From NCBI RefSeq assembly GCF_902459465.1, contig NC_047065.1, positions 19,034,001 to 19,098,000 of the forward strand: a DNA stretch of 64,000 bases. The letters run 5' to 3'. Below, piece after piece: positions 14,276-64,000 of the stretch; positions within the stretch are counted from its first letter, which is position 1, and each line of letters starts with the position of its first letter. Source of the stretch: Asterias rubens. Lineage: Eukaryota. The notes beneath the pieces were generated by a model that was given only the letters and a program-made list of their open reading frames with translations, was not told the origin of the DNA and did not search any database. The position numbers were made by a program, and so were the translations under genes.

Positions 14276-17200
14276 ATGGATCGCAACGCAGATTCAGATG
14301 AATATACTGGCCAAGAAGAGCAACAGTCGGGTACCCGACCCAATCCTCATTTGCTCCGCACAACAGGTTCAGAAACACGTCATGAACGATCCTGGAGGGT
14401 TGACGGAGCGTCACGAGGTGTTGTTGGCGGACAGTCGAACAGGAATAACTTAACATGGACTCGGTCAAGTAATCACAGCGCTGCACCGGCTGCTGGCTCC
14501 TGGAGGAATATTAACAGGGAAGCAAGTGGAGGTGCTCGGCCCAAGGATAGCAATACGTTTTGGAGGAGAAACAACTTAGAGAGAGAAGATGACTCAAAGA
14601 CTCAAATAGACCGTCAGGAAACGCCAAACTGGCGACGGAGAGCAGAGAGTCAGGGAGAAGGGACAACAGAACAGCCAAGGGACACTTCTACGATCAGTAG
14701 TGACTTCTTTAGACGGCCAGGTAAACCGAGAAGCAATTGGTAAGTTAATAGTTAAGAGGAGGGTTTACGTTTGGTAGTCACTCTTGATTTTTAAAGGAAC
14801 ATTACAGAATTGGTTTTTGCTAACAAAACAGTTGCTGGCAGTGTAAGCACTTTAGGTAATCCATCATGCAACAACTGACAAATAATCTCCATTTAAGGAA
14901 ATAAATGGTTCCGGATTTGACAATATCATAAACAAAAGTCGACAATTTTTTTTAAAATAAAAACTCGCAAATTAAGTTGATTCTGTAAAATTACAGTTAT
15001 ATAGGATTAAAACAAACAAACGGTTCAAAAACTGAAGTTCACTTTGCCTTTGACTAATTGAATACAGCAACATAGGATAAATATGTTTTGCACACTAAAA
15101 TGTTCTTCTGTCAAACAAATGAATTTTATGCAAGCAAAGTTAAGTTTGTCACAAAATAAGTTGTATCATGATTGGACAATCAACTAATATTTAATAAAAT
15201 CATGTATTTTAGGTTTATTGTTCAACACAAAATTAAACGACAGTGTAATCGTTAAAGAACCAATACTGGTCAAGAAAAAAAAACTAACACAGTAATTTAA
15301 ACTATCAATTTTAAAATGTCACAAAAAAAGTTTATTGAAAAACAAATTCATCCTTACTTCAGAGTATGTACTCAGCAAACTGAACGAATTGCCTTCATTG
15401 CTTTGCCACTATAAACGGGTTACCTTTTCAAAAGCCGAACATTTTAAACCAAAGAACATCTCCAAAAAACAAATCCAAAATGCTGAGAATGTTTTACTGT
15501 TTAAATTTCAGGGGGTCAACAACCTCGAGCCCAACCAGTCCTCCAACCCCTGTAGAAGAAACTAAATGGCGTCGAGGACAGAGCGACGTTTGTTCGGGAT
15601 CAGGGAGATACACAGGTCAAGTTCAAGTAAAGCAGACTCCCAAGACGCCCTCAATGTCAGAGGAAGAACTCAAGACACTGCTGACGGCCAGTCCACAAGA
15701 AGTTCTCTCCAAGCTTCTGAGCAGAAAACACGAATGGTTGGCACTTTTAAATCTTGACTCATTCAATGATAATGTAATGACGTTAATACTTGGTGTTTTG
15801 TCGTGTATTTGTGATTTAAATGTAGATCCAAAAGTAAAGCAGGATATTCATATGGTATTCAGTATGATAGAGTCTGAAGGGTTTCTCAGTAAACATTTGA
15901 CGAGATACTTAGTAGGTTTGTCCACACAACAGCCGCATGATGATCAAGAAAGAGATAGTGAAACCCTTGCAAACAATATCAAAATGATTTTGAAATTGCT
16001 GCAAGTTTTCCTTGAACACAAGCCAGAAATTTATGGTGAAATGGGCGTGGTTCTGATTCTTCTCGAGAAGGCTGTTTCCCTGGCAGTGGTAGAATCTTGT
16101 ACTGACATCAATCATGAAGGTCATAGTTACATGATCCAGGTAGAGCAGTTGAAAGAATGCTATCATGCACTGGACGAGTCTCATCAGATAATACAACACG
16201 TTAAGGCACGGCAGCCACCCAACAACTTCAGAGAGATTCCAATCATCCCCGACAGTTTAGAGATTCAGAAACCAACAAAGCCATTCTTACGAAAGAACAT
16301 CTTAAAGGGAAGGTATCAAGACGTCGAGCATTATCTTGATGTGCAGTTCAGGTTGTTGAGGGAGGACTTTGTTGCACCGTTACGGGAAGGTATCGCAGAG
16401 TTTCTCTCTAAAGTAAACAATCATCATCAAGACATTCGGGTGTATCGCAAAGTCTCCGTTCAAGGTCAGAAGATTGGGAAAAGAGGTCAGTTCACCCTGG
16501 AGTTTGATGTCAAAGGTCTCAACCGTATCAACTGGCAAACCAGCAAGCGTCTGATATATGGTTCATTCGTCTGTCTCACTCAGGACAATTTCAAGAGCAT
16601 TTTATGTGCGTCTGTGGCAGATCGGAACACGAAGGACTTGGAAAAAGGTCTGGTTGATGTTTGTTTTCTTACCGAGTCTAGTAGAACGCCTACAGGTACC
16701 TTTGTCATGGTCGAATCTGCAGCTTATTTTGAAGCCTATCGACACGTCTTACTAGGGCTACAACGAATGAATAGCGACAATTTCCCTTTTGAAAGGTACA
16801 TTGTGAATGTTTCATGTAATGTTAGAACACCCAAGTATCTGAGCGAAGACTGCTCTGATGTGTATGACCTACGACCATTGGTTGTTGCAACTGATCAGGT
16901 CTTTGAAGATGAGGGTCTGACTGAAACCTTCGTAAATGCAGCCTGTGTGTCAATTTTAGATCCACAAAGTTGGCCGACTGCAGAGGCCTTACATCTTGAT
17001 GAGTCACAGAAGGCAGCTGTGCAGGCAGCGTTGACGAAGGAGTTTGCCATCATCCAAGGTCCACCAGGAACGGGGAAGACTTACATTGGTCTCAAGATCA
17101 TCGAAATACTTCTGTACAATACACCTACAACTCCAGACGCGTCTCCAATTCTGGTGGTGTGCTACACAAACCATGCTCTGGATCAGTTTCTGGAGGGAAT

Positions 17201-20200
17201 TCTAAACTTTGGTGAGGAGAACCTAGTTCGTGTTGGAAGCCGAAGCAAAAGTGAAGTGCTTGAGTCTCGAAATCTGTCCTATCTAAAGCGACATCTAGGT
17301 CGCCCGCCTAAGAACATGCAGCAAAGGGAAGTACTTGAAGAAACCGAAGCGAGTTTACACGAAACAAAATCAGCAATTCATTGTACACTTCTAAAAGTGG
17401 CTTTTGCTAAAACGATCATAATTCAAGTCGAGAAGCTAAACAATGTCATGAGCAACATACATCAACAAAGTTTTCAAAAGAATAAGAAGAGACCTGAGGA
17501 TCCAACAACAAACCTTCTGAACTGGCTAAATGTGGTTGATATCGATCATGAAAGTGATAGCTCCGATATGTCGGATTCAAATGAAGAAAAAGATGAATTT
17601 ATTGACGTAGAGGATGAAAGTGCACGGATACAACATGAACGCCGAATCGATGATGAAGATGACTCGAGAGTTTCCGAAGAACAGCGAAAGCAAAATGAGC
17701 TTTCCGTATTGAGACAAAATGCAGCATACAGCACTGAATGTAAGAAACGCTGTGGTTCAAATTTGGAGTCCACCCCGAAAGAAGAACTTAAGAAGGACGA
17801 CATGATGTCTGATAGAGAAGCTCCCAGAGTCACAAATGTATGGAGTCTGACGTTAAGCGATCGTTGGCGGCTTTACAGACTCTGGGTTAAGAAGTACATT
17901 GAAGAGCAGGAGGAGATGCTGACGGATTACCGCATAAGTTATGACAGCCTTTCAAAGGAAATTCAAGCTATGAAAAACAACGTAGATTTTGAAGTTCTCT
18001 CAAAAGCAAGAGTGATTGGAATGACGACAACAGGTGCGGCCAGATGTCAGTCGGTTCTGCAGCTTCTTGGTCCTCGTATTGTGATAGTGGAAGAGGCTGC
18101 TGAAGTTCTTGAAGCTCATATCATCACCGCCCTGGCTGCAAAATGTCAGCATCTTATTCTGATTGGAGATCATCAGCAGCTGAAGCCAAACCCAACAGTC
18201 TATCGCCTGGCTAAGGTCTTTAATATGGATACCTCCTTGTTTGAACGGATGATCAACAATGGCGTGCCTTGTCAAACATTGAACCACCAGCATCGTATGC
18301 GTCCTGAAATCTCAAAACTCATGAAGAAACATTTTTATAAAAATCTTCACGACGATGAGTCTGTGATGGATTTCGATGACATAAAAGGAGTAGCACATAA
18401 CATGTTTTTCATTGATCACAATCAGTTTGAAGATGAGGGTGATGACAACAAAACCAAGTCCAATCAGCATGAAGCGGAGGTCCTTGTCGAGTTGTGTAGG
18501 TACTTGTTACATCAAGGATATCAGCCCAAACAGATTACCATTCTAACCACCTACTTGGGTCAACTCTTCACCTTCAAGAAACTTATGGATAAAGGGACCT
18601 TCGAGGGAGTTCGGGTGTCTGTGGTTGACAATTTCCAGGGAGAAGAAAATGACATCATACTTTTGTCTTTGGTTCGAAGCAACGAAGAGGGCTCCATCGG
18701 GTTCCTGAAGACTTCAAACCGTGTCTGTGTTGCCTTGTCTAGAGCTCGCATGGGTTTCTACTGTATTGGCAACGCCAACATCCTGAGAAAGTCTTCTATC
18801 TGGAGTAGCATACTAAGAACCCTTGAAGATGAGAAGAAAATTAGCTCCTCGCTTGCATTGGTTTGTCAAAACCATTTAGTAGTAACAGCGGTAGCGACGG
18901 CCAGAGATTTCAAGGAGAAGGTTCAAGACGGAGGTTGTGGCGAGCCATGTGGGTACATGCTTCCATGTAATCACATGTGCAAATTACACTGCCATCCCTT
19001 TGATCAAAAGCATAGGGTTTACAAGTGTCAAGAGCCCTGCTCAAAGTTATGTAGAAGAGAGGAACACACGTGTCTGCTAAAATGCTATGAGGAATGCACA
19101 CCATGTTCGACAAACGTACACAAACTGATGCCAAAGTGTGGTCATGTTATTCAGGTTAAATGTGAGATGTTTGATTCAGTTACTTGTACCGAACCATGTC
19201 CTAGATCACTGCCATGTGGGCATCCATGTAGGAAGGCGTGCGGAGATTCGTGTCCTACTTGTATTGTCGAGGTTTCTAAATCGATGCCAGAGTGTGGTCA
19301 TGTTATCCAGGTTGAATGTCGTCGGTATGGGTCAATCACTTGTACAGAACCATGTCCTAGAACACTGTCATGTGGACATGCATGTAAAGGGGCGTGTGGT
19401 GCTAAATGCACTACTTACTGTACTGTCAAGGTCTCTAAACACGTTACAAAGTGTGGCCATGACGTCCTGATGGAATGTGCCAAGAACCCCGACTTAACGC
19501 CCTGTACTCATCTATGTGACAAGTTGCTGGTATGTGGCCATCGTTGCCCCAAAAAGTGCAGCAAGCCATGTCCAGAGGAAAGATTAGATGACGCCAAGAT
19601 GATGAATTTAAGGATCCATTTTAATTTCGAATCATTTTGCAAAGAGAAGTGTGAGCGGTCATTGCCTTGCGGCCATCCCTGTCCTAATAAATGTTGCGAA
19701 CCGTGCCCAAAGGAGACAGTGGACCCAACCTATGGTGAATACGTAAAGCTTCACGAAAAAGTTCGTGGTCATATTGTTGCCGGCAAACTGTTTATGGTGT
19801 GTACCCAAATCACAAATAAAAAGCTTCCTGGGTGTGATCATACTGTATTAGTGCCATGTCATGCTGATATTACGTCATTAACTTGCAAAGAGACCTGCAA
19901 CAAAGAGTTATCATGTGGTCATCGGTGCAAAGATAAATGTGGCGTCCCTTGCAAATGCAAACTGAGAGTCAACAGAAAGCTTCCATCTTGTGAACATTCT
20001 GCTCGGCTCCCTTGCTACCAAGATGTCAACTCCTATCAATGTGAGAAGAAATGTCAGAAAATGTTACAATGTGGACATCCATGTTCCAATAAATGCTGTG
20101 AACCCTGCCCAACGGATGGAGAAGACGCCCAAACTGAGAGCACTCGAAACTTACCAGCAAAGGCCTGTCAACGCTCTGTGAGGAAGAAGTTTAGAGGCTG

Positions 20201-21722
20201 CCACCACAGTGTTGTACTCCCATGTTATAAAGACGTTGAGTCGGTCGTATGTGCAGAAAGGTGTACCAAAGTGTTGTCGTGTAGTCACAAATGTCCAAAC
20301 CGATGTGGCGATCCATGTCCAAGTAGCAACCCTAAGAAGACAGACACTTACTGTGACTGGAATGATGATGGCAACAGTTCATCTGAACAAGATGACCTCT
20401 ATGTCAGAAAATGCCAACACTTTGTGAACAAAAAGATACCTTCTTGCGGTCACGTCATAGAAAGTCCATGCTATAAAAGCGTTGAATCACTGGTATGCCC
20501 AAAGCCCTGTGAGAAGATTCTTCCATGTGGTCATCAATGCGAAAATAAATGTGGGGAGCCGTGCCCGAACGAAGAATGTACATCCAGTGACGACGAAGAG
20601 GAAATGAATGAAAACGAATTTGTAAAACAGAAATGCCAAGTCACCGTTTCCAAGCAGCTACCTGACTGCTGGCATTTCATGAATCTTCCTTGCTACAAGA
20701 AAGCCGAGTCCGTTGATTGTTCAAATCCATGTGAGAAGATACTGAAGTGTGGTCACAAATGCCCAAATGAATGTGGTGAGACGTGTCTTGAGTCAGAACA
20801 GTGTGACGCGCTTGTGGAAAGGAACCTTTCTGGTTGTGGTCACAAAGTAGAAACTAACTGTTGCAGAAATGTCAAACTAATCACTTGCAGAGAGAAATGT
20901 GAAAAGGTTTTGCCGTGCGGTCATGTAATCAAATTGGCCTGCTGGAAAACATCTTATTCTGCAGCTATTACTAGTTGTCAGGAACTGTGCAGTCATTTAC
21001 TTCATTGTGGTCACAACTGTCCCGGTACATGTGGTTCCTGTGCAGGACCTGGTGGAGCACATAAAGTTTGCAATAACAAATGTGGAACTCGCCTTCTTTG
21101 TGGACATAGGTGCTCGGAAATGTGCTGTGATCATGAGCTCTGTTCACCACACAAACTTTGCAATAATTCTTCAAAGCGATTTCCCCCAAAATCCACGAAG
21201 AGTTTCAGATGTAAGCATCGGAGCAAAGCACGTACCACTTCTTGCAACCTTCCATGCATCCAAAAACTTCGTTGCAATCATTTCTGTCTTGGTGTTTGTG
21301 GTGAACCCTGTCCACCTGTTTGTCGTATCTGTCACAAAAAGGATGTCGCTGGCAAATATCCTCCGGGACCCATCCGTCCGAAGGAAACATTCATATACCT
21401 TGAAGACTGTGGACATCTTTGTGAAACACGGTTTCTTGATGAAATGTTTGCAGGTTTCCAGCCATCTGGAACAAGCTTTGTGCAGATCCAACCAGCTCTG
21501 TGCCCTAAATGCCATACACCAATTCGTACATGTCCACGTTATGAAGACGCCCTTCGCACAATCAAAGAGTCAGTAGACATAGCCAGAGAGAAATGTAACC
21601 AAGACCGATTTGTTAAGCTTTCTTTTGCTGTGGGTGGGTGGATGAGGTGTCCGGAAGGTCATGTTTTCTGTCAAGACAAAGCATCAGATGATTTACTTTG
21701 CCCTGATTGCTCTTCCTACTAG
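14276..21722 (+). CDS. ZNFX1: ZNFX1-like NFX1-type zinc-finger SF1 RNA helicase, copy A, intact; exons 14276-14739 and 15512-21722 (~2224 aa)
   Basis: ZNFX1-typical YLDVQFRLLREDF and YFEAYRHVL; Walker A IQGPPGTGKT, Walker B IVEEAAEV, LIGDHQQL, QHRM, VDNFQGEEND, NRVCVALSRAR; long CGH-CxxxC array; C-terminal EDCGH...CPKC and WMRCPEGH...CPDC. Phase-2 intron tg|GTAAGT...tttcAG|g joins the exons in frame. Confidence 0.95.
20286..20753 (+). repeat. Single copy of the 468-bp zinc-finger cassette in copy A
   Basis: Bounded by cacaaatg at 20286 and 20754. Same unit is tandem in copies B and C. Confidence 0.9.
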
Positions 21723-21796
21723 CAATCAGAATCTTCAAGCGATGACATGAAATATTGTGAATGAGGACCAATGCAAACACTATGGGAAGCATACGT

Positions 21797-22032
21797 TTAA
21801 TGACAGTGGACACTATTGGTAATTGTCAAAGACCAGTCTTTTCACTTGGTGTATATCCACACATGCATAAAATAACAAACCTGTGAGATTTGAGCTCAAT
21901 CGGTTGTCGAAGTTGCGAGATAATAATGAAAGATAAAAACACTCGTCACAGAAAGTTGTGTGCTCTCAGATGCTTGTTTTCGAGACTTAAAATTCTAAAC
22001 TTGAGGTCTCGAAATCAAATTCGTGAAAAATT
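21797..22032. mobile_element. TTAA MITE in the 3'UTR, truncated in A, complete in B (41840-42129)
   Basis: TTAAtgacagtggacactattggtaattgtcaaagacc start 75 bp after the stop. B copy ends ...cactgcctTTAA. Confidence 0.75.
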
Positions 22033-22186
22033 TGCCTCCGTGGAGTGGCAGGACTGCTTATAAGATCTCGTTCAGGAGAAAACCTCATAACAAAAATAAC
22101 ACACCAATAAATCATCCACGAGCTATATAATAAAGAACGAGTAAAGGTTGTTATTAAAGGTCACATTTTATTATATATTTCTTATA

Positions 22187-22323
22187 ATGGGAGACTTTGG
22201 AACACTAGGTGAAGCAGACTTACCAGGTAAATTTTCATGTTTACGTAGTTGTGAGCATGCGCACATTACCAAGAACATTTGACTTTACCTAGTAAGTCTA
22301 TACTGCCACCAAGCGTCCCAAAA
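22187..22323. mobile_element. Short MITE-like element with imperfect long TIRs (partial copy near 42135-42240)
   Basis: tttggaacactaggtgaagcagacttaccaggtaaa inverted against tttacctagtaagtctatactgccaccaagcgtcccaaaa. Confidence 0.6.
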
Positions 22324-22380
22324 GAAGGATGGAAATATCAATGTATCTCAGATATTGACTTACCTTTTTTTTAATAAAGG

Positions 22381-22520
22381 TTCACATGATGATTCACCTG
22401 GTGGTGCAGGGTTCATGCAATGGATCACGTGATGGATCGTGTATGGGTCACGTGGTGAATCACGAGATGGTTCACGCGATTGTTCAGTGATGGTTCATGT
22501 TATTTCGGGACGGTTCGCGT
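22381..22520 (+). repeat. Degenerate 12-bp minisatellite (consensus ~TCACGTGATGGT); copy at ~42297-42445
   Basis: Successive 12-mers ttcacatgatga, ttcacctggtgg, atcacgtgatgg, tcacgtggtgaa, tcacgagatggt, tcacgcgattgt. Confidence 0.7.
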
Positions 22521-22607
22521 TATAGTTAGGCTACGCGGGTGTATTTTTTAAACAACGTTGTTATGTGAGAAAAATGTGTTGTAAAATCTGTGTTTTGAAA
22601 TTAAGCT

Positions 22608-22940
22608 TTAAAGGGAATGTACAATATTGGTAATTGTCAAAGACCCGTGTTCTCACTTGGTGTATCGAACTTGCGAAATAATAATGAAAGAAAAAACACA
22701 CTTGTCACACGGAGTTGTGTGCGTTTGGATGGTTGATTTCGAGACCTCAAGTTCTAAATTATGAGGTCTCGAAATCAAATTCGTGGAAAATTACTTCTAT
22801 CTCGAAAACTATGGCACTTTAGAGGGAGCCGTTTTTCACAATGTGTTATACCATCAACCTCTCCCCATTACTCGTCACCAAGAAAGATTTTATGCTAATA
22901 ATTATTTTGAGTAATTACCAATAGTGTCCACTGCCTTTAA
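22608..22940. mobile_element. TTAA MITE (Kolobok-like), both ends present; ortholog 42533-42825
   Basis: TTAAAGGgaatgtacaatattggtaattg...attaccaatagtgtccactgCCTTTAA. Confidence 0.8.
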
Positions 22941-23844
22941 TGTGGTCATTTATTTGTAGCCGTCATAACTGGGTTAGAACTGATCGGGACTGCGGGGTCA
23001 GGAGGAAACCATTTTTGGTCAGGTTGACCCGGAAACTGGTCAAACATTGGGTTTTAATTTGGATTCTGCGCCTGATCCATTTATTGGTTGCGTTAACACA
23101 GATTCCGGGTCAATCTGATCCAGATCGGCTCAGGGAAGATATGAACAAAACAAATAAATATATTTTCAGTGCTTACAGTGTTATCTATGCATCAACTACT
23201 CAAACTTAATGGTTGAAAGCTTCTTAGTACATTGCTGTATATAAAGAAAACATGACTAAGTAAACATAATGTGAAGTACACTTATAGACCTATATATGGA
23301 AAACAATAGAACCGTAAGCTTTTAAATATTATGTGGAATAAGCTATGTAAAGCAAATTGTGGTTTTATAGTTAACAATTTTGTGTTCGTAATGCGTTTAA
23401 AAGTACTGAATTATAACACTCAAACTGGACCTGTTTAACGTAACATTTCATTATTACATAATATGAATATTACACGAAGAGCGACACATTAATGCGAACA
23501 TTTTGTTCAGAACCTGGAGAGATTACTTGAATTTCATGGAATTTTCTGCAGAATCAGAGAGAGCTAGCAGCCCTTGATAAGTTGTTAAGTTGATGATTGT
23601 TGAAAGATCACTTATGAAATCCCTAAATATTTACGTGTCTCTATTACACGCTTTCTGTGAGTCCTTGATTTAACTTGCCGTATTATCAGTATTTTCATTA
23701 CAGATTTCTTGGTGATTTCCAACACTTTTTAATTAAAGTATTATACATCCCCGTTGCAAATTTAATCTTTTAACATCTATTATTATCGTTGTGGTAGCCT
23801 TTGCCAAAACATATGATTCGAACTGCCTCTAGCCACCGGGCAAT

Positions 23845-23917
23845 CTCGGTGCATGGTCTAGTTTGGTAAGACACTGCTCTAGAGTTGCAAGGGTCGTTGG
23901 TTCGAATCCCACCCGAG
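23845..23917 (+). mobile_element. tRNA-derived SINE head / tRNA pseudogene
   Basis: A-box-like TGGTCTAGTTTGG, B-box GGTTCGAATCC, ctcgg/ccgag acceptor-like ends, gtct/agac D-stem; other stems degenerate. Confidence 0.7.
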
Positions 23918-31339: not shown

Positions 31340-31350
31340 GGGGATTCCCC
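31340..31350. promoter_or_regulatory. kB-type site GGGGATTCCCC inside a B-specific 102-bp segment (31322-31423)
   Basis: Exact 11-bp match to a classical p50-type kB site. The segment is absent in A (14119/14120) and C. Confidence 0.4.
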
Positions 31351-41005: not shown

Positions 41006-41008
<3 letters not shown>

Positions 41009-47817: not shown

Positions 47818-47890
47818 TTATAGTTGCTTTTATCAAGGAATCTGTATGTCATAATATGACATACAGATTCCTTGATAAAAGCAACTATAA
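47818..47890. repeat. Perfect palindrome, 35-bp arms, 3-nt loop
   Basis: ttatagttgcttttatcaaggaatctgtatgtcat-aat-atgacatacagattccttgataaaagcaactataa. Confidence 0.95.
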
Positions 47891-53200: not shown

Positions 53201-56200
53201 TGTTGCCAGCTTGGTGTTTATATCCCAATTGCGGGCAAAATGTTAGACTCAGTAATATTACCACAAATGTTGTTATACTGTAAACTTTTCACAAGGCTTT
53301 TGCCTATTAAAACATAATTCCATCCACATAATTATGTTAGTGGCGCTGGATAAAAAAAAAATATAAAAAAACTTTGCAATATTGTCTGCTATTTTTTTTC
53401 ATATAAAATTTGTAGTTCCTTTTTTGCCCCAATGGCCGCCCGTAGTACACAGCCATTGCGACATATCGGGGAATTCCCGCGGATGAGAAATCAACAATTG
53501 TGTCTGAAGGTTGAGGTCAAGGTAAAACCGACAAGATCTGCATAACAGACGTTGTGTGTCAATTAAGCGGCATACAAAACCGGTTCTTTAATGGCATAGG
53601 GGTGGGGTTTTTTTTGTCTGGGGGAGTAATCTGTTTTTGTAACCCTGATCTGGTGGATATATGACAGAAATCAAAAGTGAACTGCCTTATCGAATGTGTT
53701 GATCCTAGTGGCTGATCCTAGTCTGTGACTTTCACATCGAAGGCCGTACTCTTGGAAGTATAGATCGAATTACACGGTGTTTGTAGGTAAGATGAGTATG
53801 CAAGAATTCATGTATCATGTACGTAAACATGATACCGGACTGCATATTGGATCGTTGCACTCGAAATTACCACTGCCGTAGTGCTTTTCAATGGGGAAGT
53901 AATGTTAAGGAAACAAAGTTAAACAGCTACCTGAGCGGAATGTTTTAAACGGAAATGGTATTTTAACTTGTTTATAATGCACTTGTTCACCATTTTAATG
54001 TAATTTTGATATGTGTACACTTCTGAATTTCAAGCACAAATTGTGAGGAGCAAATCTAAACTGGTAAAAAAAAAAAAACGGACGGAATGGCGTCCAGAAA
54101 CAATGTGACAAAATACAAAAAAACTGCTGGTCCCTTCATGTCGCAACTCGCTCAATACACATGCTCTTGTACAATTATTCGAATCATTTAGTTTAATACA
54201 CATCTAATCTAATCATGGTACCTGCCTTGATATTTGTTAATATAATTAGTTTTAGAGTAGGCTATACAAACTCCCGAGTACAAAGTACTGAGTATACAGT
54301 GCTAACACACATAGGTGTATGGGTAAAAAAAAACAAAATTAATATTCTTTATCCCCGATGCAAATTTAACATCTACTATACAAACTCATTATCATAATTA
54401 CCATCCATCGACAGAGCGGTTAGGTTCCAAGGCACTCTGGTTTATCCACCAAAGATACAGTCAATGCCAAGTCTTATAATAGAGGCAGTGGACACTATTG
54501 GTATAATTACTCAAAATAATTATAAGCATAAAACCTTACTTGGTAGCAAGTAATGGGGAGAGGTTGATAGTATAAAACTAACTTGCAAGACATTACATGG
54601 TTTTTAAATTGGATATACTTTAAACTCCCAGTTAAGAATTAAACCGGATTACGGATCTAAAGGGATCTGACCAATTTCTGGGTCAGGCTAGCCTTGTCCA
54701 AGGCTATTACCACTGCTATGAATTCAAGGCAGTGGACACTATTGGTAATTACTCAAAATAATTATTATCATAAAACCTTACTTGGTAACGAGTTATCGGG
54801 AGAGGTTGGTAGTATAAAACATTGTGAGAAACGGCTCCCTTTGAAGTGGAGTAGTTTTAGAAAAAGAAGTAAACTTCCACGAATTTGATTTCGAGACCTC
54901 AGATTTAGAATTTGAGATCTCTAAATCAACCATCTAAAAGTACATAACTTCGTGTGACATGGGTGTTTTTTCTTTTATTTTTATCTCGCAACTTCGACGA
55001 CCAATTGAGCTCAAATTTTCACAGGTTTGTTATTTTATGCCTATGTTTTGATACACCAAGTGAGAAGATATTGAAAAGTACCAATAGTGTCCAGTTTCTT
55101 TAAACTGAGATGAACTAATTCGTTCTTTAAGAAGGCAACATTAAACGAACATATCACAAATAATGTTTTGTTATAACGAGTTTGTTCACGTACTTAATTT
55201 GGGATGACAATGCTAACTGCAAGACATTACATGGTTTCTTAAATTGATATACTTTAAACTCCCAGTTGAGAATTGAACCCGGATTACGGATCTAAAGGGA
55301 TCTGACAAATTTCTGGTCAGGCTTACCCGGAAAGTGGTAACCAAATACATGTACTTTAACTACGGTAGTGCGTAGACACGCTTACTTTCCCATTAAAAGA
55401 CACTGGACACTACTATTGATATTTTTCAAATTACCAAGCTCAATCGGTCATCAAAGTTGGAAGATAATAATGAAAGAAAAAACACCCCTTTTACACGAAG
55501 TTGCGTGCTTTCAGATGCTTGATTTTGAGACCTCAAATTCTAAATCTGAGGTCTCGAAATCAAATTCGTGGAAATTTACTTCTTTTTCGAAAGCTACTCC
55601 ACTTCAAATGGAGCCGTTTCTCACAATGTTTTATACTTCCAACCTCTCCCCATTACTCGTTACTAAGTAAAGTTATGTGCTAATAATAATTTTGAGTAAT
55701 TACCAATTTTAGATCAATAATTGTGGCCCATTATTATAAGCCTTGTATTTTTGTGTGGTATACATTGTCTATTGCAATTATAGTTCTTATATTATAGCGC
55801 ATTTACAATAACTGTATCAAATGTTTCTTTACATTGCAACCATAATTTGCACACAGAAAATGTGAAATGTAGCTTTTGCATTTTTTCTTTATCGGGTTAA
55901 TGTAAACTCCCCGATGAGAAATCGACAATGAGTTCTAAAGGTTGGGGTCAAAAGTTCAAAGCAATCAACTCAGAACTTCATATTACACATACACAAGGTG
56001 CAGCGGGTGGGTTTTTAGTGGGGTCGGAGTACAGCAATCAGTTTTTTGTGATATGAGTTTTAATTCCCTAAACTTGGAATCTGGGAAGCGTTGCTGTCAG
56101 TGAACGCTTCTCAGATTGTGTATTCCTATTAGAGAATATTCCTTCTGCGGACAAAAAAAAATCGCTCAGGATTTTCAGCGATATCTCAAAAACACGACCA

Positions 56201-56770
56201 CCTTTTGAAACAGTGTTCCCACGTACATGTACATTTGTAAAGGATAAAAACAAGGTTCAAAAAAAAAGGTATAATTTGTCTTAAAGGATTTGGGTACTTT
56301 TTCAAAATGTCCACAGATTTACATTAAACAGAAATGAGTAAAACAATGTCATGAAAATACGTTTTTACATGCTTAAAATAGTTTTGGTCTCATGATCTGT
56401 GAGACGAAAATTATTTTCATGACATCGTTTTACTCATTTCCCAAAAACTACAGTACCTCAGCACGTAATATTTTCAGTGAAGCTTTCTACTATCGTCATC
56501 TTCAAACTGTGTAAGTTTGGTGTAAATCTGTGGACATTGTGATTTTTGTCCTACCAAAAGTACATAGACCCTTTAATGCAAATTAGCTCCTAGTGGATGA
56601 TACCCATGCCTACATAAAATGTATCAGCCTCAATGTTGTCATTTCCCTAAGCTACTCAAACCGATAAAATGTCGGCCAAGGAGCAGTTACAGTTAAGTAT
56701 GAATTTCCTTTTTGTCCACAAACGGTGAGAGTACAACTATTGACTTCACTCGAAATGTTTTTTTCTAGCT

Positions 56771-59700
56771 ATGGATCGCAACGCAGATTCAGATGAATAT
56801 ACTGGCCAAGAAGAGCAACAGTCGGGTACCCGACCCAATCCTCATTTGCTCCGCACAACAGGTTCAGAAACACGTCATGAACGATCCTGGAGGGTTGACG
56901 GAGCGTCACGAGGTGTTGTTGGCGGACAGTCGAACAGGAATAACTTAACATGGACTCGGTCAAGTAATCACAGCGCTGCTCCGGCTGCTGGCTCCTGGAG
57001 GAATATTAACAGGGAAGCAAGTGGAGGTGCTCGGCCCAAGGATAGCAATACGTCTTGGAGGAGAAACAACTTAGAGAGAGAAGATGACTCAAAGACTCAA
57101 ATAGACCGTCAGGAAACACCAAACTGGCGACGGAGAGCAGAGAGTCAGGGAGAAGGGACAACAGAACAGCCAAGGGACACTTCTACGATCAGTAGTGACT
57201 TCTTTAGACGGCCAGGTAAACCGAGAAGCAATGGGTAAGTTAATAGTTAAGAGGAGGGTTTACGTTTGGTAGTCACTCTTGATTTTTAAAGGAACATTAC
57301 AGAATTGGTTTTTGCTAACAAAACAGTTGCTGGCAGTGTAAGCACTTTAGGTAATCCATCATGCAACAACTGACAAATAATCTCCATGTAAGGACATAAA
57401 TGGTTCCGGATTTGACAATATCATAAACAAAAGTCGACAATTTTTGTTTTTAAATAAAAACTCGCAAATTAAGTTGATTCTGTAAAATTACAGTTATATA
57501 GGATTAAAACAAACAAACGGTTCAAAAACTGAAGTTCACTTTGCCTTTGACTAATTGAATACAGCAACATAGGATACATATGTTTTGCACACTAAAATGT
57601 TCTTCTGTCAAACAAATGAATTTTATGCAAGCAAAGTTAAGTTTGTCACAAGATAAGTTGTTTCATGATTGGAAAATCAACTGATATTTAATAAAATCAT
57701 GTATTTTAGGTTTATTATTCAACACAAAATTAAACGACAGTGTAATCGTTAAAGAACCAATACTGGTCAAGAAAAAAAACTAACACAGTAATTTAAACTA
57801 TCTATTTTAAAATGTCACAAAAAAAGTTTATTGAAAAACAAATTCATCCTTACTTCAGAGTATGTACTCAACAAACTGAACGAATTGCCTTCATTGCTTT
57901 GCCACTGTAAACGGGTTGCATTTTTCAAAAGCCGAACATTTTAAACCAAAGAACATCTCCAAAAAACAAATCCAAAATGCTGAGAATGTTTTACTGTTTA
58001 AATTTCAGGGGGTCAACAACCTCGAGCCCAACCAGTCCTCCAACCCCTGTAGAAGAAACTAAATGGCGTCGAGGACAGAGCGACGTTTGTTCGGGATCAG
58101 GGAGATACACAGGTCAAGTTCAAGTAAAGCAGACTCCCAAGACGCCCTCAATGTCAGAGGAAGAACTCAAGACACTGCTGACGGCCAGTCCACAAGAAGT
58201 TCTCTCCAAGCTTCTGAGCAGAAAACACGAATGGTTGGCACTTTTAAATCTAGACTCATTCAATGATAATGTAATGACGTTAATACTTGGTGTTTTTTCG
58301 TGTATTTGTGATTTAAATGTAGATCCAAAAGTAAAGCAGGATATTCATATGGTATTCAGTATGATAGAGTCTGAAGGGTTTCTCATTAAACATTTGACGA
58401 GATACTTAGTAGGTTTGTCCACACAACAGCCGCATGATGATCAAGAAAGAGATAGTGAAACCCTTGAAAACAGTATCAAAATGATTTTGAAATTGCTGCA
58501 AGTTTTCCTTGAACAAAAGCCAGAAATTTATGGTGAAATGGGCGTGGTTCTGATTCTTCTCGAGAAGGCTGTTTCCCTGGCAGTGGTAGAATCTTGTACT
58601 GACATCAATCATGAAGGTCATAGTTACATGATCAAGGTAGAGCAGTTGAAAGAATGCTATCATGCACTGGACGAGTCTCATCAGATAAAACAACACGTTA
58701 AGGCACGGCAGCCACCCAACAACTTCAGAGAGATTCCAATCATCCCCGACAGTTTAGAGATTCAGAAACCAACAAAGCCATTCTTACGAAAGAACATCTT
58801 AAAGGGAAGGTATCAAGACGTCGAGCATTATCTTGATGTGCAGTTCAGGTTGTTGAGGGAGGACTTTGTTGCACCGTTACGGGAAGGTATCTCAGAGTTT
58901 CTCTCTAAAGTAAACAATCATCATCAAGACATTCGGGTGTATCGCAAAGTCTCCGTTCAAGGTCAGAAGATTGGGAAAAGAGGTCAGTTCACCCTGGAGT
59001 TTGATGTCAAAGGTCTCAACCGTATCAACTGGCAAACCAGCAAGCGTCTGATATATGGTTCATTCGTCTGTCTCACTAAGGACAGTTTCAAGAGCATTTT
59101 ATGTGCGTCTGTGGCAGATCGGAACACGAAGGACTTGGAAAAAGGTCTTGTTGATGTTTGTTTTTTTACCGAGTGTAGTAGCACGCCTACAGGTACCTTT
59201 GTCATGGTCGAATCTGCAGCTTATTTTGAAGCCTATCGACACGTCTTACTAGGGCTACAACGAATGAAAAGCGACAATTTCCCTTTTGAAAGGTACATTG
59301 TGAATGTTTCATGTAATGTTAAAACACCCAGTTATCTGGGCAAAGACTGCTCTGATGTGTATGACCTACGACCATTGGTTGTTGAAACTGATCAGGTCTT
59401 TGAAGATGAGGGTCTGACTGAAACCTTCGTAAATGCAGCATGTGTGTCAATTTTAGATCCACAAAGTTGGCCGGCTGCAGAGGCCTTACATCTTGACGAG
59501 TCACAGAAGGCAGCTGTGCAGGCAGCATTGACGAAGGAGTTTGCCATCATCCAAGGTCCACCAGGAACGGGGAAGACTTACATTGGTCTCAAGATCATCG
59601 AATTACTCCTTTACAATATACCTACGACAATAGATGCATCTCCAATTCTTGTGGTGTGCTACACAAACCATGCTCTCGATCAGTTTCTGGAGGGAGTTCT

Positions 59701-62700
59701 ACGTTTTGATGAGAAGAATCTGGTTCGTGTTGGAAGCCGAAGCAAAAGTGTAGTGCTTGAGTCTCGAAATCTGTCCTATCTAAAACGACATCTAGGTCGC
59801 CCGCCTAAGAACATGCAGCAAAGGGAAGTACTTGAAGAAACCGAAGCGAGTTTACACGGAATAAAATCAGCAATTCATCGTACACTTCTAAAAGTGGCTT
59901 TTGCTAAAACGATCATAATTCAAGTCGAGAAGCTAAACAATGTCATGAGCGACAAACATCAACAAAGTTTTCAAAAGAATAAGAAGAGACCTGAGGATCC
60001 AACAACAAACCTTCTGAACTGGCTAAATGTGGTTGATATCAATCATGAAAGTGATAGCTCCGATATGTCAGATTCAAATGAAGAAAAAGATGAATTTATT
60101 GACGTAGAGGATGAAAGTGCACGGATACAACATGAACGCCGAATCGATGATGAAGATGACTCGAGAGTTTCCGAAGAACAGCGAAAGCAAAATGAGCTTT
60201 CCGTATTGAGACAAAATGCAGCATACAGCACTGAATGTAAGAAACGCTGTGGTTCAAATTTGGAGTCCACCCCGAAAGAAGAACTTAAGAAGGACGACAT
60301 GATGTCTGATAGAGAAGCTTCTAGAGTCACAAATGTATGGAGTCTGACGTTCAGCGATCGTTGGCGGCTTTACAGACTCTGGGTTAAGAGGTACATTGAA
60401 GAGCAGGAGGAGATGCTGAAGGATTACCGCAAAAGTTATGACAGCCTTTCAAAGGAAATTCAAGCTATGAAAAACAGCGTAGAATTTGAAGTTCTCTCAA
60501 AAGCAAGAGTGATTGGAATGACGACAACAGGTGCGGCCAGATGTCAGTCGGCTCTGCAGCTTCTTGGTCCTCGTATTGTGATAGTGGAAGAGGCTGCTGA
60601 AGTTCTTGAAGCTCATATCATTACCGCCCTGACTGCAAAATGTCAGCATCTCATTCTGATTGGAGATCATCAGCAGCTGAAGCCAAACCCAACAGTCTAT
60701 CGCCTGGCTAAGGTTTTCAATATGGATACCTCCTTGTTTGAACGGATGATCAACAACGGCGTGCCTTGTCAAACATTGAACCACCAGCATCGTATGCGTC
60801 CTGAAATCTCAAAACTCATGAAGAAACATTTTTATAAAAATCTTCACGACGATGAGTCTGTGATGGATTTCGATGACATGAAAGGAGTAGCACATAACAT
60901 GTTTTTCATTGATCACAATCAGTTTGAAGATGAGGGTGATGACAACAAAACCAAGTCCAATCAGCATGAAGCGGAGGTCCTTGTCGAGTTGTGTAGGTAC
61001 TTGTTACATCAAGGATATCAGCCCAAACAGATTACCATTCTAACCACCTACTTAGGTCAACTCTTCACCTTCAAGAAACTTATGGATAAAGGGACCTTCG
61101 AGGGAGTTCGGGTGTCTGTGGTTGACAATTTCCAGGGAGAAGAAAATGACATCATACTTTTGTCTTTGGTTCGAAGCAACGAAGAGGGTTCCATCGGGTT
61201 CCTGAAGACTTCAAATCGTGTTTGTGTTGCCTTGTCTAGAGCTCGCATGGGTTTCTACTGTATTGGCAACGCCAACATCCTGAGAAAGTCTACTATCTGG
61301 AGTGGCATACTAAGAACCCTTAAAGATGAGAAGAAAATTAGCCCCTCGCTTGCATTGGTTTGTCAAAACCATTTAGTAGTAACAGCGGTAGCGTCGGCCA
61401 GAGATTTCAAGGAGAAGGTTCAAGACGGAGGTTGTGGCGAGCCATGTGGGTACAGGCTTCCATGTAATCACATATGCAAATTACACTGCCATCCCTTTGA
61501 TCAAAACCATATAGTTTACAAGTGTCAAGAGCCCTGCTCAAAGTTATGTAGAAGAAAGGAACACACGTGTCTGCTGAAATGCTATGAGGAATGCACATCG
61601 TGTTTGACAAATGTACAGAAACTGATGCCAAAGTGTGGTCATGTTATTCAGGTTGAATGTGAGATGTTTGATTCAGTTACTTGTACCGAACCATGTCCTA
61701 GATCACTGCCATGTGGGCATCCATGTAGGAAGGCGTGCGGAGATTCGTGTCCTACTTGTATTGTTGAGGTTTCTAAATCGATGCCAGAGTGTGGTAATGT
61801 TATCCAGGTTCAATGTCGTTGGTATGAGTCAATCACTTGTACAGAACCATGTCCTAGAACACTGTCATGTGGACATGCATGTAAAGGGGCGTGTGGTGCT
61901 AAATGCACTACTTACTGTACTGTCAAGGTCTCTAAACACGTTACAAAGTGTGGCCATGACGTCCTGATGGAATGTGCCAAGAACCCCGACTTAACGCCCT
62001 GTACTCATCTATGTGACAAGTTGCTGGTATGTGGCCATCGTTGCCCCGAAAAGTGCAGCGAGCCATGTCCAGAGGAAAGATTAGATGACGCCAAGATGAT
62101 GAAGCATTTAAGGATCCATTTTAATTTCAAATCATTTTGCAAAGAGAAGTGTGAGCGGTCATTGCCTTGCGGCCATCCCTGTCCTAATAAATGTTGCGAA
62201 CCGTGCCCAAAGGAAACAGTGGACCCAACCTATGGTGAATACATAAAGCTTCACGAAAAAGTTCGTGGTCATATTGTTGCCGGCAAACTGTTTATGGTGT
62301 GTACCCAAATCACAAATAAAAAGCTTATTGTGTGTGATCATACTGTAGCAGTGCCATGTCATACTGATATTGCGTCATTAACTTGCAAAGAGACCTGCAA
62401 CAAAGAGTTATCATGTGGTCATCGGTGCAAAGATAAATGTGGCGTCCCCTGCAAATGCAAACTGAGAGTCAACAGAAAGCTTCCATCTTGTGAACATTCT
62501 GCTCGGCTCCCTTGCTACCAAGATTTCAACTCCTATCAATGTGAGAAGAAATGTCAGAAAATGTTACAATGTGGGCATCCATGTTCCAATAAATGTTGTG
62601 AACCCTGCCCAACGGATGGAGAAGACGCCCAAACTGAGAGCACTCGAAACTCCCCAGCAAAGGCCTGTCAACGCTCTGTGAGGAAGAAGTTTAGTGTCTG

Positions 62701-63574
62701 CCACCACAGTGTTGTACTCCCATGTTATAAAGACGTTGAGTCGGTCGTATGTGCAGAAAGGTGTACCAAAGTGTTGTCGTGTAGTCACAAATGTCCAAAC
62801 CGATGTGGCGATCCATGTCCAAGTAGCAACCCTAAGAAGACAGACACTTACTGTGACTGGATTGATGATGGCAACAGTTCATCTGAACAAGATGACCTCT
62901 ATGTCAGAAAATGCCAACAGTTTGTGAACAAAAAGATACCTTCTTGCGGTCACGTCATAGAAAGTCCATGCTATAAAAGCGTTGAATCACTGGTATGCCC
63001 AAAGCCCTGTGAGAAGATTCTTCCATGTGGTCATCAATGCGAAAACAAATGTGGGGAGCCGTGCCCGAACGAAGAATGTACATCCAGTGACGACGAAGAG
63101 GAAATGAATGAAAACGAATTTGTAAAACAGAGTTGTCAAGTCACCGTATACAAGCAGCTACCTGACTGTTTGCATTTTATGAATCTTCCGTGCTACAAGA
63201 AAGCAGAGTCCGTTGAATGTTCAAATACATGTGAGAAGATACTGAAGTGTGGTCACAAATGTCCAAACCGATGTGGCGATCCATGTCCAAGTAGCAACCC
63301 TAAGAAGACAGACACTTACTATGACTGGAATGATGATGGCAACAGTTCATCTGAACAAGATGACCTCTATGTCAGAAAATGCCAACAGTTTGTGAACAAA
63401 AAGATACCTTCTTGCGGTCACGTCATAGAAAGTCCATGCTATAAAAGCGTTGAATCACTGGTATGCCCAAAGCCCTGTGAGAAGATTCTTCCATGTGGTC
63501 ATCAATGCGAAAACAAATGTGGGGAGCCGTGCCCGAACGAAGAATGTACATCCAGTGACGACGAAGAGGAATAA
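56771..63574 (+). CDS. ZNFX1: ZNFX1-like copy C, frameshifted in the cassette array; exons 56771-57234 and 58009-63574 (~2009 aa)
   Basis: Helicase motifs intact. gaggaaatgaatg is read as gaggaataaatg (net -1 bp) giving TAA at 63572-63574; repeats continue out of frame. Confidence 0.85.
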
Positions 63575-64000
63575 ATGAAAACGAATTTGTAAAACAGAGT
63601 TGTCAAGTCACCGTATACAAGCAGCTACCTGACTGTTTGCATTTTATGAATCTTCCGTGCTACAAGAAAGCAGAGTCCGTTGAATGTTCAAATACATGTG
63701 AGAAGATACTGAAGTGTGGTCACAAATGTCCAAACCGATGTGGCGATCCATGTCCAAGTAGCAACCCTAAGAAGACAGACACTTACTATGACTGGAATGA
63801 TGATGGCAACAGTTCATCTGAACAAGATGACCTCTATGTCAGAAAATGCCAACAGTTTGTGAACAAAAAGATACCTTCTTGCGGTCACGTCATAGAAAGT
63901 CCATGCTATAAAAGCGTTGAATCACTGGTATGCCCAAAGCCCTGTGAGAAGATTCTTCCATGTGGTCATCAATGCGAAAACAAATGTGGGGAGCCGTGCC
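62786..64000 (+). repeat. Coding tandem repeat, at least 2.6 x 468 bp
   Basis: Unit starts at 62786, 63254, 63721 (second unit 467 bp, confirming the 1-bp loss). Third unit truncated by the window end. Confidence 0.95.

What the first reader, a model, noticed from the sequence alone, without database searches (positions are those of the whole stretch)
14276..64000. Tandem ZNFX1 array with an accordion-like zinc-finger domain: candidate diversified antiviral RNA-sensor system
Seen: three near-identical ZNFX1 genes share the helicase engine but carry 1, 6 and at least 2.6 copies of an exact in-frame 468-bp cassette. Known: ZNFX1 is an Upf1-like RNA helicase used in antiviral sensing (vertebrates) and small-RNA inheritance (C. 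elegans), and is single-copy in mammals. Inference: unequal crossing-over at two nested scales (~18-kb gene unit, 468-bp cassette) produces a repertoire with different finger-array lengths. The layout (small exon + giant repeat-bearing exon, clustered, mosaic) recalls the sea urchin SpTransformer (185/333) immune family.
Basis: partly seen in the sequence, partly recalled or inferred. Interest (0 to 1): 0.85.

Follow-up and report, generated by a model that had tools for sequence, protein, structure and literature searches.

The report
Starfish ZNFX1-like gene triplet, variable fingers
A starfish (Asterias rubens) has recently triplicated a ZNFX1-like antiviral helicase gene, and two copies have multiplied a two-zinc-finger block (1, 6 and 4 copies), but both expanded copies have interrupted reading frames, so this looks like gene birth and decay, not a tuned sensor repertoire.

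Summary
The window is Asterias rubens chromosome LR699095.1. It holds three same-strand ZNFX1-like genes, 96-97% identical in DNA, inside tandem units of about 17.5-25 kb. Each gene has a small first exon and a giant second exon. A 468-bp (156-aa) block of two NFX1-type zinc fingers plus acidic linkers is present 1, 6 and 4 times; only 2.6 of the last array lie in the window. Only two blocks are identical; the rest differ by 1-27 bases, and one is 467 bp.

The sister species A. amurensis has one unit with one block at the same syntenic position. The triplication and block amplification are therefore recent and specific to A. rubens, best explained by unequal crossing-over at two scales plus gene conversion.

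Copy B stops just after its six blocks and its C-terminal ubiquitin-ligase part is riddled with indels. Copy C is cut by a one-base deletion inside its array. The blocks show no diversifying selection. In human ZNFX1 the fingers form a stalk between helicase and ligase, not a known RNA-reading surface.

Best reading: a birth-and-death tandem cluster with stalk-length variation, of moderate interest. A "diversified sensor system" is not supported.

The parts
1707..25040 (+). Tandem duplication unit A (spacer + gene A + 3' flank), approximate bounds. Includes a unit-A-only 5.7-kb transposon insertion.
   Evidence: Self-BLAST: 1707-3962 matches 25046-26359 and 50402-52647; 24424-24937 matches 44659-45172; 24931-26359 matches 50275-51716. 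Collinear with the single A. amurensis unit L002.
14276..21722 (+). Gene A, the intact ZNFX1-like gene. Exon 1 is 14276-14739 and exon 2 is 15512-21722. Product P0001, 2224 aa.
   Evidence: Pfam ZNFX1 + AAA_11 + AAA_12. phmmer to human ZNFX1 structure 9q9z, E = 1e-264.
20279..20746 (+). Single 468-bp cassette of gene A (156 aa: two NFX1-type finger modules plus two acidic linkers). This is the ancestral state.
   Evidence: A. amurensis also has one cassette. It is flanked by an imperfect ~30-bp direct repeat.
25046..50384 (+). Tandem duplication unit B, approximate bounds. Includes a unit-B-only ~5.1-kb satellite-flanked insertion at 45173-50274.
31580..41765 (+). Gene B, one part from first to last homologous base. 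Exon 1 is 31580-46. The NCBI model has an extra mini-exon at 32223-32330, from a 283-bp duplication. The giant-exon ORF is 33101-40978 (model P0123, 2803 aa). Beyond the stop lies a degenerate remnant of the C-terminal tail. Breaks relative to A and C: one 80-bp insertion and three small deletions, two of them frame-shifting.
37909..40716 (+). Six-cassette array of gene B (6 x 468 bp, all in frame). B2 and B3 are identical, B1 differs by 1 base, and B4-B6 are recombinant or older types.
50402..64000 (+). Tandem duplication unit C, which runs off the window. It is the last unit and is followed by unique downstream DNA shared with A. amurensis.
56771..64000 (+). Gene C, which runs off the window; the homologous stop lies ~1.6 kb beyond it. 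Exon 1 is 56771-57235 and the giant exon starts at about 58010. The reading frame is interrupted once, by a single-base deletion inside the cassette array. NCBI therefore calls two products, P0002 (2009 aa) and P0121 (659 aa). The C-terminal tail is otherwise collinear with A.
62779..64000 (+). Cassette array of gene C. There are 4.0 copies in all, of which 2.6 lie inside the window. C1-C2 are of the B1-B3 type and C3-C4 of the A1 type. C4 begins with the 'terminal-type' junction.

Best explanation
This is a young, lineage-specific tandem triplication of one ZNFX1-like gene in Asterias rubens. The gene encodes an Upf1-type RNA helicase, a stalk of NFX1-type zinc fingers, and a C-terminal RING-like/RZ-like ubiquitin-ligase end. 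The triplication arose by unequal crossing-over between ~17.5-kb units and was then partly homogenised by gene conversion, which gives the mosaic pattern.

Inside the giant exon, a 468-bp block encodes two finger modules and two acidic linkers. It sits between two similar finger-start motifs 468 bp apart. Misalignment at these motifs produced in-frame tandem copies that then expanded and recombined. This inserts 156 aa per copy into the stalk between the helicase and the ligase end.

Copy A keeps the ancestral single block and the complete reading frame, and is the working gene. Copies B (6 blocks) and C (4 blocks) are redundant duplicates under relaxed constraint. B has lost the ligase end. 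C is interrupted inside the array. The cluster as a whole is evolving by birth and death.

What is shown: the anatomy, the ancestry, the lesions and the lack of cassette diversification. What is inferred: the recombination mechanism, the functional status of B and C, and the effect on stalk length.
For: Identity and family:
- Pfam ZNFX1/AAA_11/AAA_12.
- Human ZNFX1 structure 9q9z, E = 1e-264.
- The AF2 model of the finger region matches yeast Fap1 (an NFX1 homologue) and ZNFX1 9q9z.

Tandem origin:
- The units are direct repeats that include the spacers, at 94-97% identity, and the A|B and B|C junctions are homologous.
- A. amurensis has one unit, one cassette and the same neighbours: P0125-P0003-P0122 corresponds to P0006-P0005-A/B/C.
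- dS among copies is 0.038-0.042, against 0.071-0.081 to the A. amurensis orthologue.

Gene conversion: block-wise switches in which copy is divergent.

Cassette dynamics:
- Two sequence types plus recombinants occur in the same order in B and C.
- B2 and B3 are identical.
- C4 has a different junction type, so there were at least two separate events.
- Flanking direct repeats exist in the single-copy state.

Decay:
- B's tail carries four indels and C's array one deletion.
- Lineage replacement:silent counts are A 11:11, stem 49:47, B 26:17 and C 36:16. B+C against A+stem gives Fisher p = 0.04.
- The two neighbouring ZNFX1-like genes just upstream of the window are also interrupted relative to their intact A. 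amurensis orthologues.

Role of the fingers: a rigid stalk between helicase and E3 in human ZNFX1, where truncation removing Miz and RZ abolishes ligase activity (bioRxiv 10.1101/2025.10.14.682297; PMC13270118).
Against: - B's replacement:silent ratio is still below the neutral expectation (p = 0.005).
- All indels in B's 4.8 kb of pre-cassette coding sequence are multiples of three, and all six of its cassettes are open. B may therefore still be a selected, ligase-less protein, not a pseudogene.
- C's single lesion could be an assembly error or a polymorphism. If so, C would encode a complete four-cassette protein and the 'decay' reading would rest on B and the neighbours alone.
- No expression data could be reached.
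- Counts per lineage are small, and gene conversion blurs the assignment of changes to lineages.
Confidence: 0.6

Rival explanations
1. One reading: an adaptively maintained repertoire. The three genes are all functional antiviral RNA sensors or effectors. Different finger-array lengths give different properties (reach of the ligase, granule or polymer formation, ligand range), and selection keeps the cassette number variable.
For: - ZNFX1 is an immune gene family that is expanded in several invertebrates, e.g. 11 copies in an earthworm (PMC7253469), 3 in Aplysia (PMC9334734), and many long paralogues in corals and sea stars.
- B shows residual purifying selection.
- All cassettes keep their Cys/His ligands.
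- Recent internal repeats in the finger region recur in ZNFX1-like proteins of corals, Patiria and amphioxus.
- C. elegans ZNFX-1 works without an RZ domain (bioRxiv 10.1101/2025.10.14.682297), so a shortened C-terminus is not necessarily dead.
Against: - There is no sequence diversification among cassettes (18 replacement to 12 silent variable codons).
- As assembled, both multi-cassette copies lose the RING-like domain as well as the RZ-like end. In human ZNFX1 loss of both abolishes ligase activity.
- Constraint is relaxed in B+C.
- The sister species manages with one gene and one cassette.
Confidence: 0.22
2. Assembly artefact: extra units are retained haplotypes placed in tandem, and/or the cassette counts and the small lesions are errors of a long-read assembly in repetitive DNA.
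For: - The genome comes from a heterozygous marine invertebrate (assembly GCA_902459465.3).
- B1-B3 are almost identical.
- C's lesion is a single-base deletion next to a substitution.
- Four of the five cluster genes are interrupted, which could hint at systematic consensus errors.
Against: - There are no N runs in the window.
- Three units cannot come from two haplotypes.
- The units differ by large private structural features: a 5.7-kb transposon only in A, a 5.1-kb satellite-flanked insertion and a 283-bp duplication only in B, and an 80-bp insertion in B's tail.
- The two unit junctions are themselves diverged copies, at 97.6%.
- Divergence among units, at 3-4% with dS ~0.04, is about half the between-species distance.
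- An independent ENA assembly carries a 256-aa stretch 100% identical to copy B but only 96.9% and 95.7% identical to A and C.
- Arrays of 1.9-2.8 kb are well within long-read length.
Confidence: 0.1
3. Sub- or neofunctionalisation of B as a ligase-less regulator. A helicase with a very long stalk and no E3 end could co-assemble with A through the armadillo and helicase contacts and modulate it, as a decoy or dominant-negative.
For: - B's 2,625-codon ORF is open, with in-frame indels only, and its replacement:silent ratio is below neutral.
- B's exon 1 and its splice sites are intact.
- Human ZNFX1 polymerises through armadillo, helicase and stalk contacts independently of the ligase end (bioRxiv 10.1101/2025.10.14.682297).
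Against: - With only ~43 lineage-specific single-base changes, about two stop codons are expected by chance, so the open frame is weak evidence (my estimate).
- There are no expression data.
- The same pattern is expected for a gene only recently released from constraint.
Confidence: 0.08

Closest known systems
[quoted passage not shown]
   Same: The order of parts is the same: N-terminal armadillo-type region, Upf1-like helicase with the ZNFX1 (1B) domain, an NFX1-type zinc-finger array, then a RING/U-box-like ('Miz') Cys/His pattern and a terminal W-x-x-C-P-x-G-H...C-P-x-C motif.
   Different: - Multi-copy and tandem here, but single-copy in mammals.
- Many more finger modules, several of them separated by acidic, low-confidence linkers.
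- The ~220-aa helical bundle between the Miz and RZ domains is missing in the sea-star clade.
- The RZ-like end is short and not recognised by Pfam PF20173.
- Function is untested in any echinoderm; no paper was found.
Lineage-specific ZNFX1 expansions in invertebrates (earthworm 11 copies, PMC7253469; Aplysia 3, PMC9334734; surveyed in Blasi et al. 2022, Fish Shellfish Immunol 121:456, cited there and not readable here)
   Same: Several ZNFX1-like paralogues per genome. At least five lie within ~95 kb in A. rubens. Lengths vary widely, and recent internal repeats occur in the finger region of other species' proteins.
   Different: Here the duplication history can be read base by base against a single-copy sister species. 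One defined two-finger cassette varies as 1/6/4 between copies that are 96-97% identical. I found no published description of this.
SpTransformer (Sp185/333) immune gene family of sea urchins
   Same: An echinoderm gene cluster with two exons, repeats in the large second exon, segmental duplications and mosaic members (PMC5491942, PMC10887614).
   Different: - No homology; these genes are ZNFX1-like throughout.
- SpTrf genes are small, about 50 in number, restricted to euechinoids and flanked by short tandem repeats (PMC5491942, PMC10887614, PMC11810900).
- Here the genes are 7-9 kb and only three in number, the cassettes are near-identical instead of forming element patterns, and the A|B junction has no microsatellite.
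Copy-number-variable tandem zinc-finger arrays evolving by unequal crossing-over (e.g. C2H2 arrays of PRDM9/KRAB-ZNF genes; from general knowledge)
   Same: In-frame tandem finger units with very high identity between neighbours, recombinant units, and number variation between close paralogues.
   Different: A different finger type (NFX1-type, two fingers plus linkers per 156-aa unit). There is no hypervariable contact residue pattern and no evidence that these fingers read nucleic-acid sequence.

Membership tests
ZNFX1 (helicase-E3) family | Upf1-like SF1 helicase core with Walker A motif and the ZNFX1-specific (1B) domain | tested here: met
   PF25396 ZNFX1 (E ~1e-28), AAA_11 and AAA_12 in all three ORFs. 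GPPGTGKT is present. phmmer to 9q9z gives E = 1e-264 over residues 47-1228.
ZNFX1 (helicase-E3) family | N-terminal armadillo-type domain | tested here: met
   The alignment to the human ZNFX1 chain starts at query residue 47. There is a separate hit to the ZNFX1 N-terminal fragment 9eve_A, E = 4e-4, residues 63-222.
ZNFX1 (helicase-E3) family | Array of NFX1-type zinc fingers after the helicase | tested here: met
   Motif C-x(1-6)-H-x-C-x3-C/H-x(3-4)-H/C-x(1-10)-C is found 7 times in A and 12 times in B. The AF2 model matches yeast Fap1 7zw0_sh (E = 3e-9) and ZNFX1 9q9z (E = 1e-7). No Pfam family at all was reported for these segments at E <= 10, and phmmer against the PDB found nothing for the cassette alone.
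ZNFX1 (helicase-E3) family | C-terminal Miz-type RING/U-box-like ligase domain | tested here: inconclusive
   Invariant Cys/His columns across 40 homologues in A's tail: C849, C852, C878, H880, C909, C912. Fold matches to RING domains are only weak, E ~1. The domain is present in frame in A and in C's downstream ORF, but not in frame in B.
ZNFX1 (helicase-E3) family | Helical bundle plus canonical RZ finger (PF20173) at the C-terminus | tested here: not met
   No PF20173 hit, even at E <= 10. The alignment shows that the sea-star clade lacks the ~220-aa bundle. It ends in a short W-x-R-C-P-E-G-H...C-P-D-C motif without the G-D-C-G-G / I-G-G-x-x-H parts seen in bird, hemichordate and sea-urchin proteins. 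The genes are therefore best called 'ZNFX1-like'.
SpTransformer (185/333) family | Homologous SpTrf protein (leader plus glycine-rich, RGD and histidine-rich regions), restricted to euechinoids | tested here: not met
   The whole product is accounted for by ZNFX1 homology. The organism is an asteroid. The SpTrf family is stated to be unique to euechinoids (PMC11810900).
SpTransformer (185/333) family | Small two-exon genes in clusters, surrounded by short tandem repeats | tested here: not met
   The two-exon layout and clustering are present, but the genes are 7-9 kb. The A|B unit junction is a clean join. The only satellite is a private insertion in unit B.
Tandem segmental duplication by unequal crossing-over (birth-and-death gene cluster) | Direct-orientation units including the spacers, homologous junctions, and a single unit in the sister species at the syntenic place | tested here: met

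The most novel reading that the evidence does not exclude
The cassette number is a selected, polymorphic 'stalk-length' trait. A. rubens would then keep a set of ZNFX1-like proteins whose helicase and ligase ends are spaced by 1, 4 or 6 flexible two-finger modules, plus a ligase-less long-stalk form. Together these would tune how RNA is trapped in ubiquitin-coated or polymeric assemblies. That would make the locus a natural allelic series for the recently proposed stalk function of ZNFX1.
Probability: 0.12. Interest if true: 0.7.

Novelty: new variant of a known kind. Interest (0 to 1): 0.4.

Why it matters
ZNFX1 has only recently been recognised as an RNA-activated helicase joined by a zinc-finger stalk to an unusual ubiquitin ligase. 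What the stalk does is still open.

This locus gives a cleanly dated natural example, with a single-copy, single-cassette sister species as reference. It shows how that stalk can lengthen in 156-aa steps, and how ZNFX1-like genes multiply and decay in an invertebrate that has no interferon system.

If the long forms prove to be expressed, they would be a ready-made length series for structural and comparative work. If not, the locus is a tidy textbook case of nested unequal crossing-over and birth-and-death evolution in an immune gene cluster. It is also a warning that multi-copy 'repertoires' read from sequence alone may be mostly decaying copies.

Tried and rejected
- Pfam on the cassette, the finger region, the tail and exon 1, even at E <= 10, gave no family. 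phmmer of cassette plus tail against the PDB gave nothing. The finger type therefore had to be shown by motif counts and by fold search.
- A search for transcript-derived protein fragments spanning the start of exon 2, meant to give spliced-junction or paralogue-specific expression evidence, returned only distant homologues. Expression remains untested.
- The ENA contig carrying the B-identical fragment could not be fetched because the file was too large. It is only weak independent support for copy B.
- Literature searches for ZNFX1 with Asterias, sea star or echinoderm found nothing relevant. The survey by Blasi et al. 2022 is not in the library.
- Rfam found no RNA family in the window.
- Small ORFs in the spacers and in the satellite insertion have no credible Pfam match; the sub-threshold hits at E 0.03-0.09 were treated as chance.
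- A whole-library search with one cassette showed that only Asterias proteins match the full 156 aa. Elsewhere only the ~55-aa finger core matches. The cassette as a unit is therefore clade-specific, but this adds nothing about function.
- I considered retained haplotypes as the source of the extra copies and rejected it as the main explanation, for the reasons listed under the assembly-artefact rival.
- I considered the long open frame of B as proof of function and rejected it as statistically weak.

Note: the alignment tools printed consensus lines on their own. They were not used. My scripts printed alignments of the host ZNFX1-like copies that show their lesions. These are host genes, not an element or a toxin.

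Full report
[quoted passage not shown] The contig look-up places copy C on LR699095.1 of assembly GCA_902459465.3, which is Asterias rubens. The fetched locus overlaps the window base for base. The window therefore corresponds to about 19,034,001-19,098,000 of that chromosome. It contains no N.

**Checking the observation: the genes.**
- Three + strand ORFs of 2080, 2625 and 1865 codons lie at 15480-21722, 33101-40978 and 57977-63574.
- All three carry the Pfam ZNFX1 domain and the AAA_11/AAA_12 helicase halves. Copy A aligns to the human ZNFX1 cryo-EM chain 9q9z with E = 1e-264.
- Each ORF is preceded by a ~155-codon exon, at 14276-14739, 31580-32046 and 56771-57235, with canonical donor and acceptor sites in a compatible phase.
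- The public gene models are P0001 (A, 2224 aa), P0123 (B, 2803 aa), and P0002 plus P0121 (C, 2009 + 659 aa).

**Checking the observation: the cassette.**
- Tandem Repeats Finder reports the 468-bp period with 6.0 copies in B (37909-40737) and 2.6 copies up to the window end in C. A has one copy, at 20279-20746.
- Reading the same record beyond the window shows that C has 4.0 copies and then a tail collinear with A's.
B2 and B3 are identical and B1 differs at one base. The other pairs differ at 4-27 of 468 bases, and one C cassette is 467 bases long.

**What the cassette is.** It encodes 156 aa. It starts in the middle of one finger motif (C-G-H-K-C-P-N-R-C-G-D-P-C) and holds two complete modules of the form C...C-x-H...C...C-x-K-x-L-x-C-G-H-x-C-x3-C-x3-C, each followed by an acidic, serine-rich linker.
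- The NF-X1 motif is found 7 times in A and 12 times in B.
- An AlphaFold2 model of A's residues 1100-2080, built on 40 homologues, has mean pLDDT 66. The finger modules score 70-85. The two cassette linkers, model residues 517-544 and 598-620, score below 50.
- Foldseek's only significant matches are yeast Fap1, the NFX1 homologue (7zw0_sh, E = 3e-9), and human ZNFX1 (9q9z, E = 1e-7).
- A search of 1.8 billion representatives shows that only the Asterias cluster matches the full cassette. Elsewhere only the ~55-aa finger core is matched, 5-15 times per protein.

**How the array arose: the units.**
- Self-comparison shows three direct units that include the spacers, at 94-97.6% identity. The A|B junction is homologous to the B|C junction.
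- Unit A carries a private 5.7-kb transposon. Unit B carries a private 5.1-kb satellite-flanked insertion and a 283-bp duplication at the end of exon 1.
- In A. amurensis the syntenic locus has one unit, one cassette and no 468-bp repeat, followed by the same downstream DNA that follows unit C in A. rubens.
- The neighbours are also conserved. P0006 (+), P0005 (-) and A/B/C (+) in A. rubens correspond to P0125, P0003 and P0122 in A. amurensis.
- Synonymous divergence is 0.038-0.042 among the copies and 0.071-0.081 to the A. amurensis orthologue. The triplication therefore post-dates the species split, allowing for homogenisation.
- That homogenisation is visible. Over exon 1 and the intron B is the odd one out; over 16.7-17.5 kb C is; over 19.1-19.9 kb B is again; and in the cassette A is.

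**How the array arose: the cassettes.**
- The cassettes fall into two sequence types plus recombinants. The B1-B3/C1-C2 type comes first and the A1-like type comes last in both arrays.
- C4 starts with the junction otherwise seen after the last cassette, so there was more than one duplication event and register.
- In the single-copy state of both species the cassette is already bracketed by a ~30-bp imperfect direct repeat, the starts of successive fingers.
It remains an inference from pattern.

- Only A is intact.
- B's ORF stops shortly after the sixth cassette. Beyond the stop, the sequence homologous to A's last ~250 codons carries one 80-bp insertion and three small deletions, two of them frame-shifting.
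- C is cut by a single-base deletion inside its array, which gives an immediate stop. The rest continues as a separate 662-codon ORF with an intact tail.

**What is lost in B and C.**
- The tail holds Cys/His columns that are invariant across 40 homologues, in a RING/U-box-like pattern, plus a terminal W-x-R-C-P-E-G-H...C-P-D-C motif.
- In human ZNFX1 the corresponding Miz and RZ domains are the two ligase centres. A patient truncation removing both is inactive. The NFX1-type fingers form a rigid stalk between helicase and ligase (bioRxiv 10.1101/2025.10.14.682297; see also PMC13270118).
- By homology, B as assembled is a helicase with a very long stalk and no ligase end. C as assembled yields a helicase with less than two cassettes.

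**Selection.**
- With A. amurensis as outgroup, single-base changes private to each lineage split replacement:silent as A 11:11, ancestral/outgroup branch 49:47, B 26:17 and C 36:16.
- Against a neutral share of 0.79, B is still constrained (p = 0.005) and C only marginally (p = 0.07). B+C are more relaxed than A+stem (Fisher p = 0.04).
- Among the 11 A. rubens cassettes, 18 variable codons change the residue and 12 do not, and none touches a ligand Cys or His of the finger cores.
- There is therefore no sign of diversifying selection. 'Diversified' applies to number only.

**Wider context.**
- The two ZNFX1-like genes just upstream of the window are also interrupted relative to their intact A. 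amurensis orthologues. Four of the five genes of the A. rubens cluster are thus C-terminally compromised.
- Exact 15-residue repeats at fixed spacing occur within the Cys/His-rich region of ZNFX1-like proteins from corals, Patiria and amphioxus. An expandable finger region looks like a family trait.
- The sea-star clade lacks the helical bundle and the canonical RZ finger of vertebrate, hemichordate and sea-urchin ZNFX1. 'ZNFX1-like' is the accurate name.
- ZNFX1 multiplication in invertebrates is already reported (PMC7253469, PMC9334734). I found nothing on echinoderm ZNFX1 or on this cassette.

**Artefact check.** I could not see reads. Several points argue for a real three-unit array:
- there are no gaps in the window;
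- each unit has private large insertions;
- the unit junctions are diverged copies of each other;
- divergence among units is about half the interspecies distance;
- three units cannot derive from two haplotypes;
- an independent ENA contig encodes 256 residues identical to B but not to A or C.

Cassette counts and C's one-base lesion remain the items most in need of read-level confirmation.

**Verdict.** The structure is real, recent and nicely resolved. The two-scale unequal crossing-over mechanism is well supported. The functional reading as a diversified sensor repertoire is not supported.

The most likely picture is birth-and-death evolution of a ZNFX1-like cluster, with A as the working gene and B and C as relaxed, partly disabled duplicates in which the stalk cassette has amplified (confidence about 0.6). 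A maintained length series, or a ligase-less regulatory B, cannot be excluded without expression and population data.

Novelty: a new variant of a known kind. Interest: moderate.

Noticed in passing
window 3984-9691: A ~5.7-kb insertion present only in unit A's spacer. It is bounded by ~40-nt terminal inverted repeats (3984-4025 / 9649-9691). It carries a 528-codon ORF on the minus strand (7075-8661) with THAP, HTH_Tnp_4 and DDE_Tnp_4 domains, so it is a PIF/Harbinger-type DNA transposon that arrived after the triplication.
   Followed up: partly
window 45173-50274: A ~5.1-kb insertion private to the 3' end of unit B. It consists of a 20-bp satellite of ~104 copies (45197-47307) and 21.5 copies of the same unit in inverted orientation (49814-50251), flanking ~2.5 kb with no recognisable gene. 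It may be a foldback-type element. The long ORFs inside it, such as 46207-47403 (-), are artefacts of the repeat.
   Followed up: partly
window 1-1561 and 2865-4431: A local 1.56-kb duplication in the spacer at 99.6% identity, younger than the unit triplication.
   Followed up: no
window 31946-32340: Copy B has a ~283-bp tandem duplication that includes the 3' end of exon 1 and its donor site. The NCBI model uses the second copy as an extra 36-codon mini-exon at 32223-32330.
   Followed up: partly
L003 10001-16659 and L004 18421-24465 (A. rubens, just upstream of the window): Two further ZNFX1-like genes. P0005 is on the opposite strand and ends ~2.3 kb before the window start. P0006 plus P0126 is the other. 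Each is interrupted once relative to its intact A. amurensis orthologue: P0005 by a frame change, P0006 by an in-frame stop. The cluster has at least five members within ~95 kb.
   Followed up: partly
window 20748-21719 (tail of copy A) and alignment A2: Sea-star ZNFX1-like proteins (Asterias, Patiria) lack the ~220-aa helical bundle between the RING-like domain and the RZ finger. They end in a shortened RZ-like motif that Pfam PF20173 does not recognise.
   Followed up: partly
window 12519-12684: An 85-bp unit repeated twice at 98% identity in the spacer upstream of gene A.
   Followed up: no
proteins P0010, P0018-P0020, P0028, P0031, P0039, P0054 (other species): Recent internal repeats, seen as exact 15-mers at fixed spacings of 54-326 residues, within the Cys/His-rich region of ZNFX1-like proteins from Patiria, corals and amphioxus. 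This suggests that finger-array expansion recurs across the family.
   Followed up: partly
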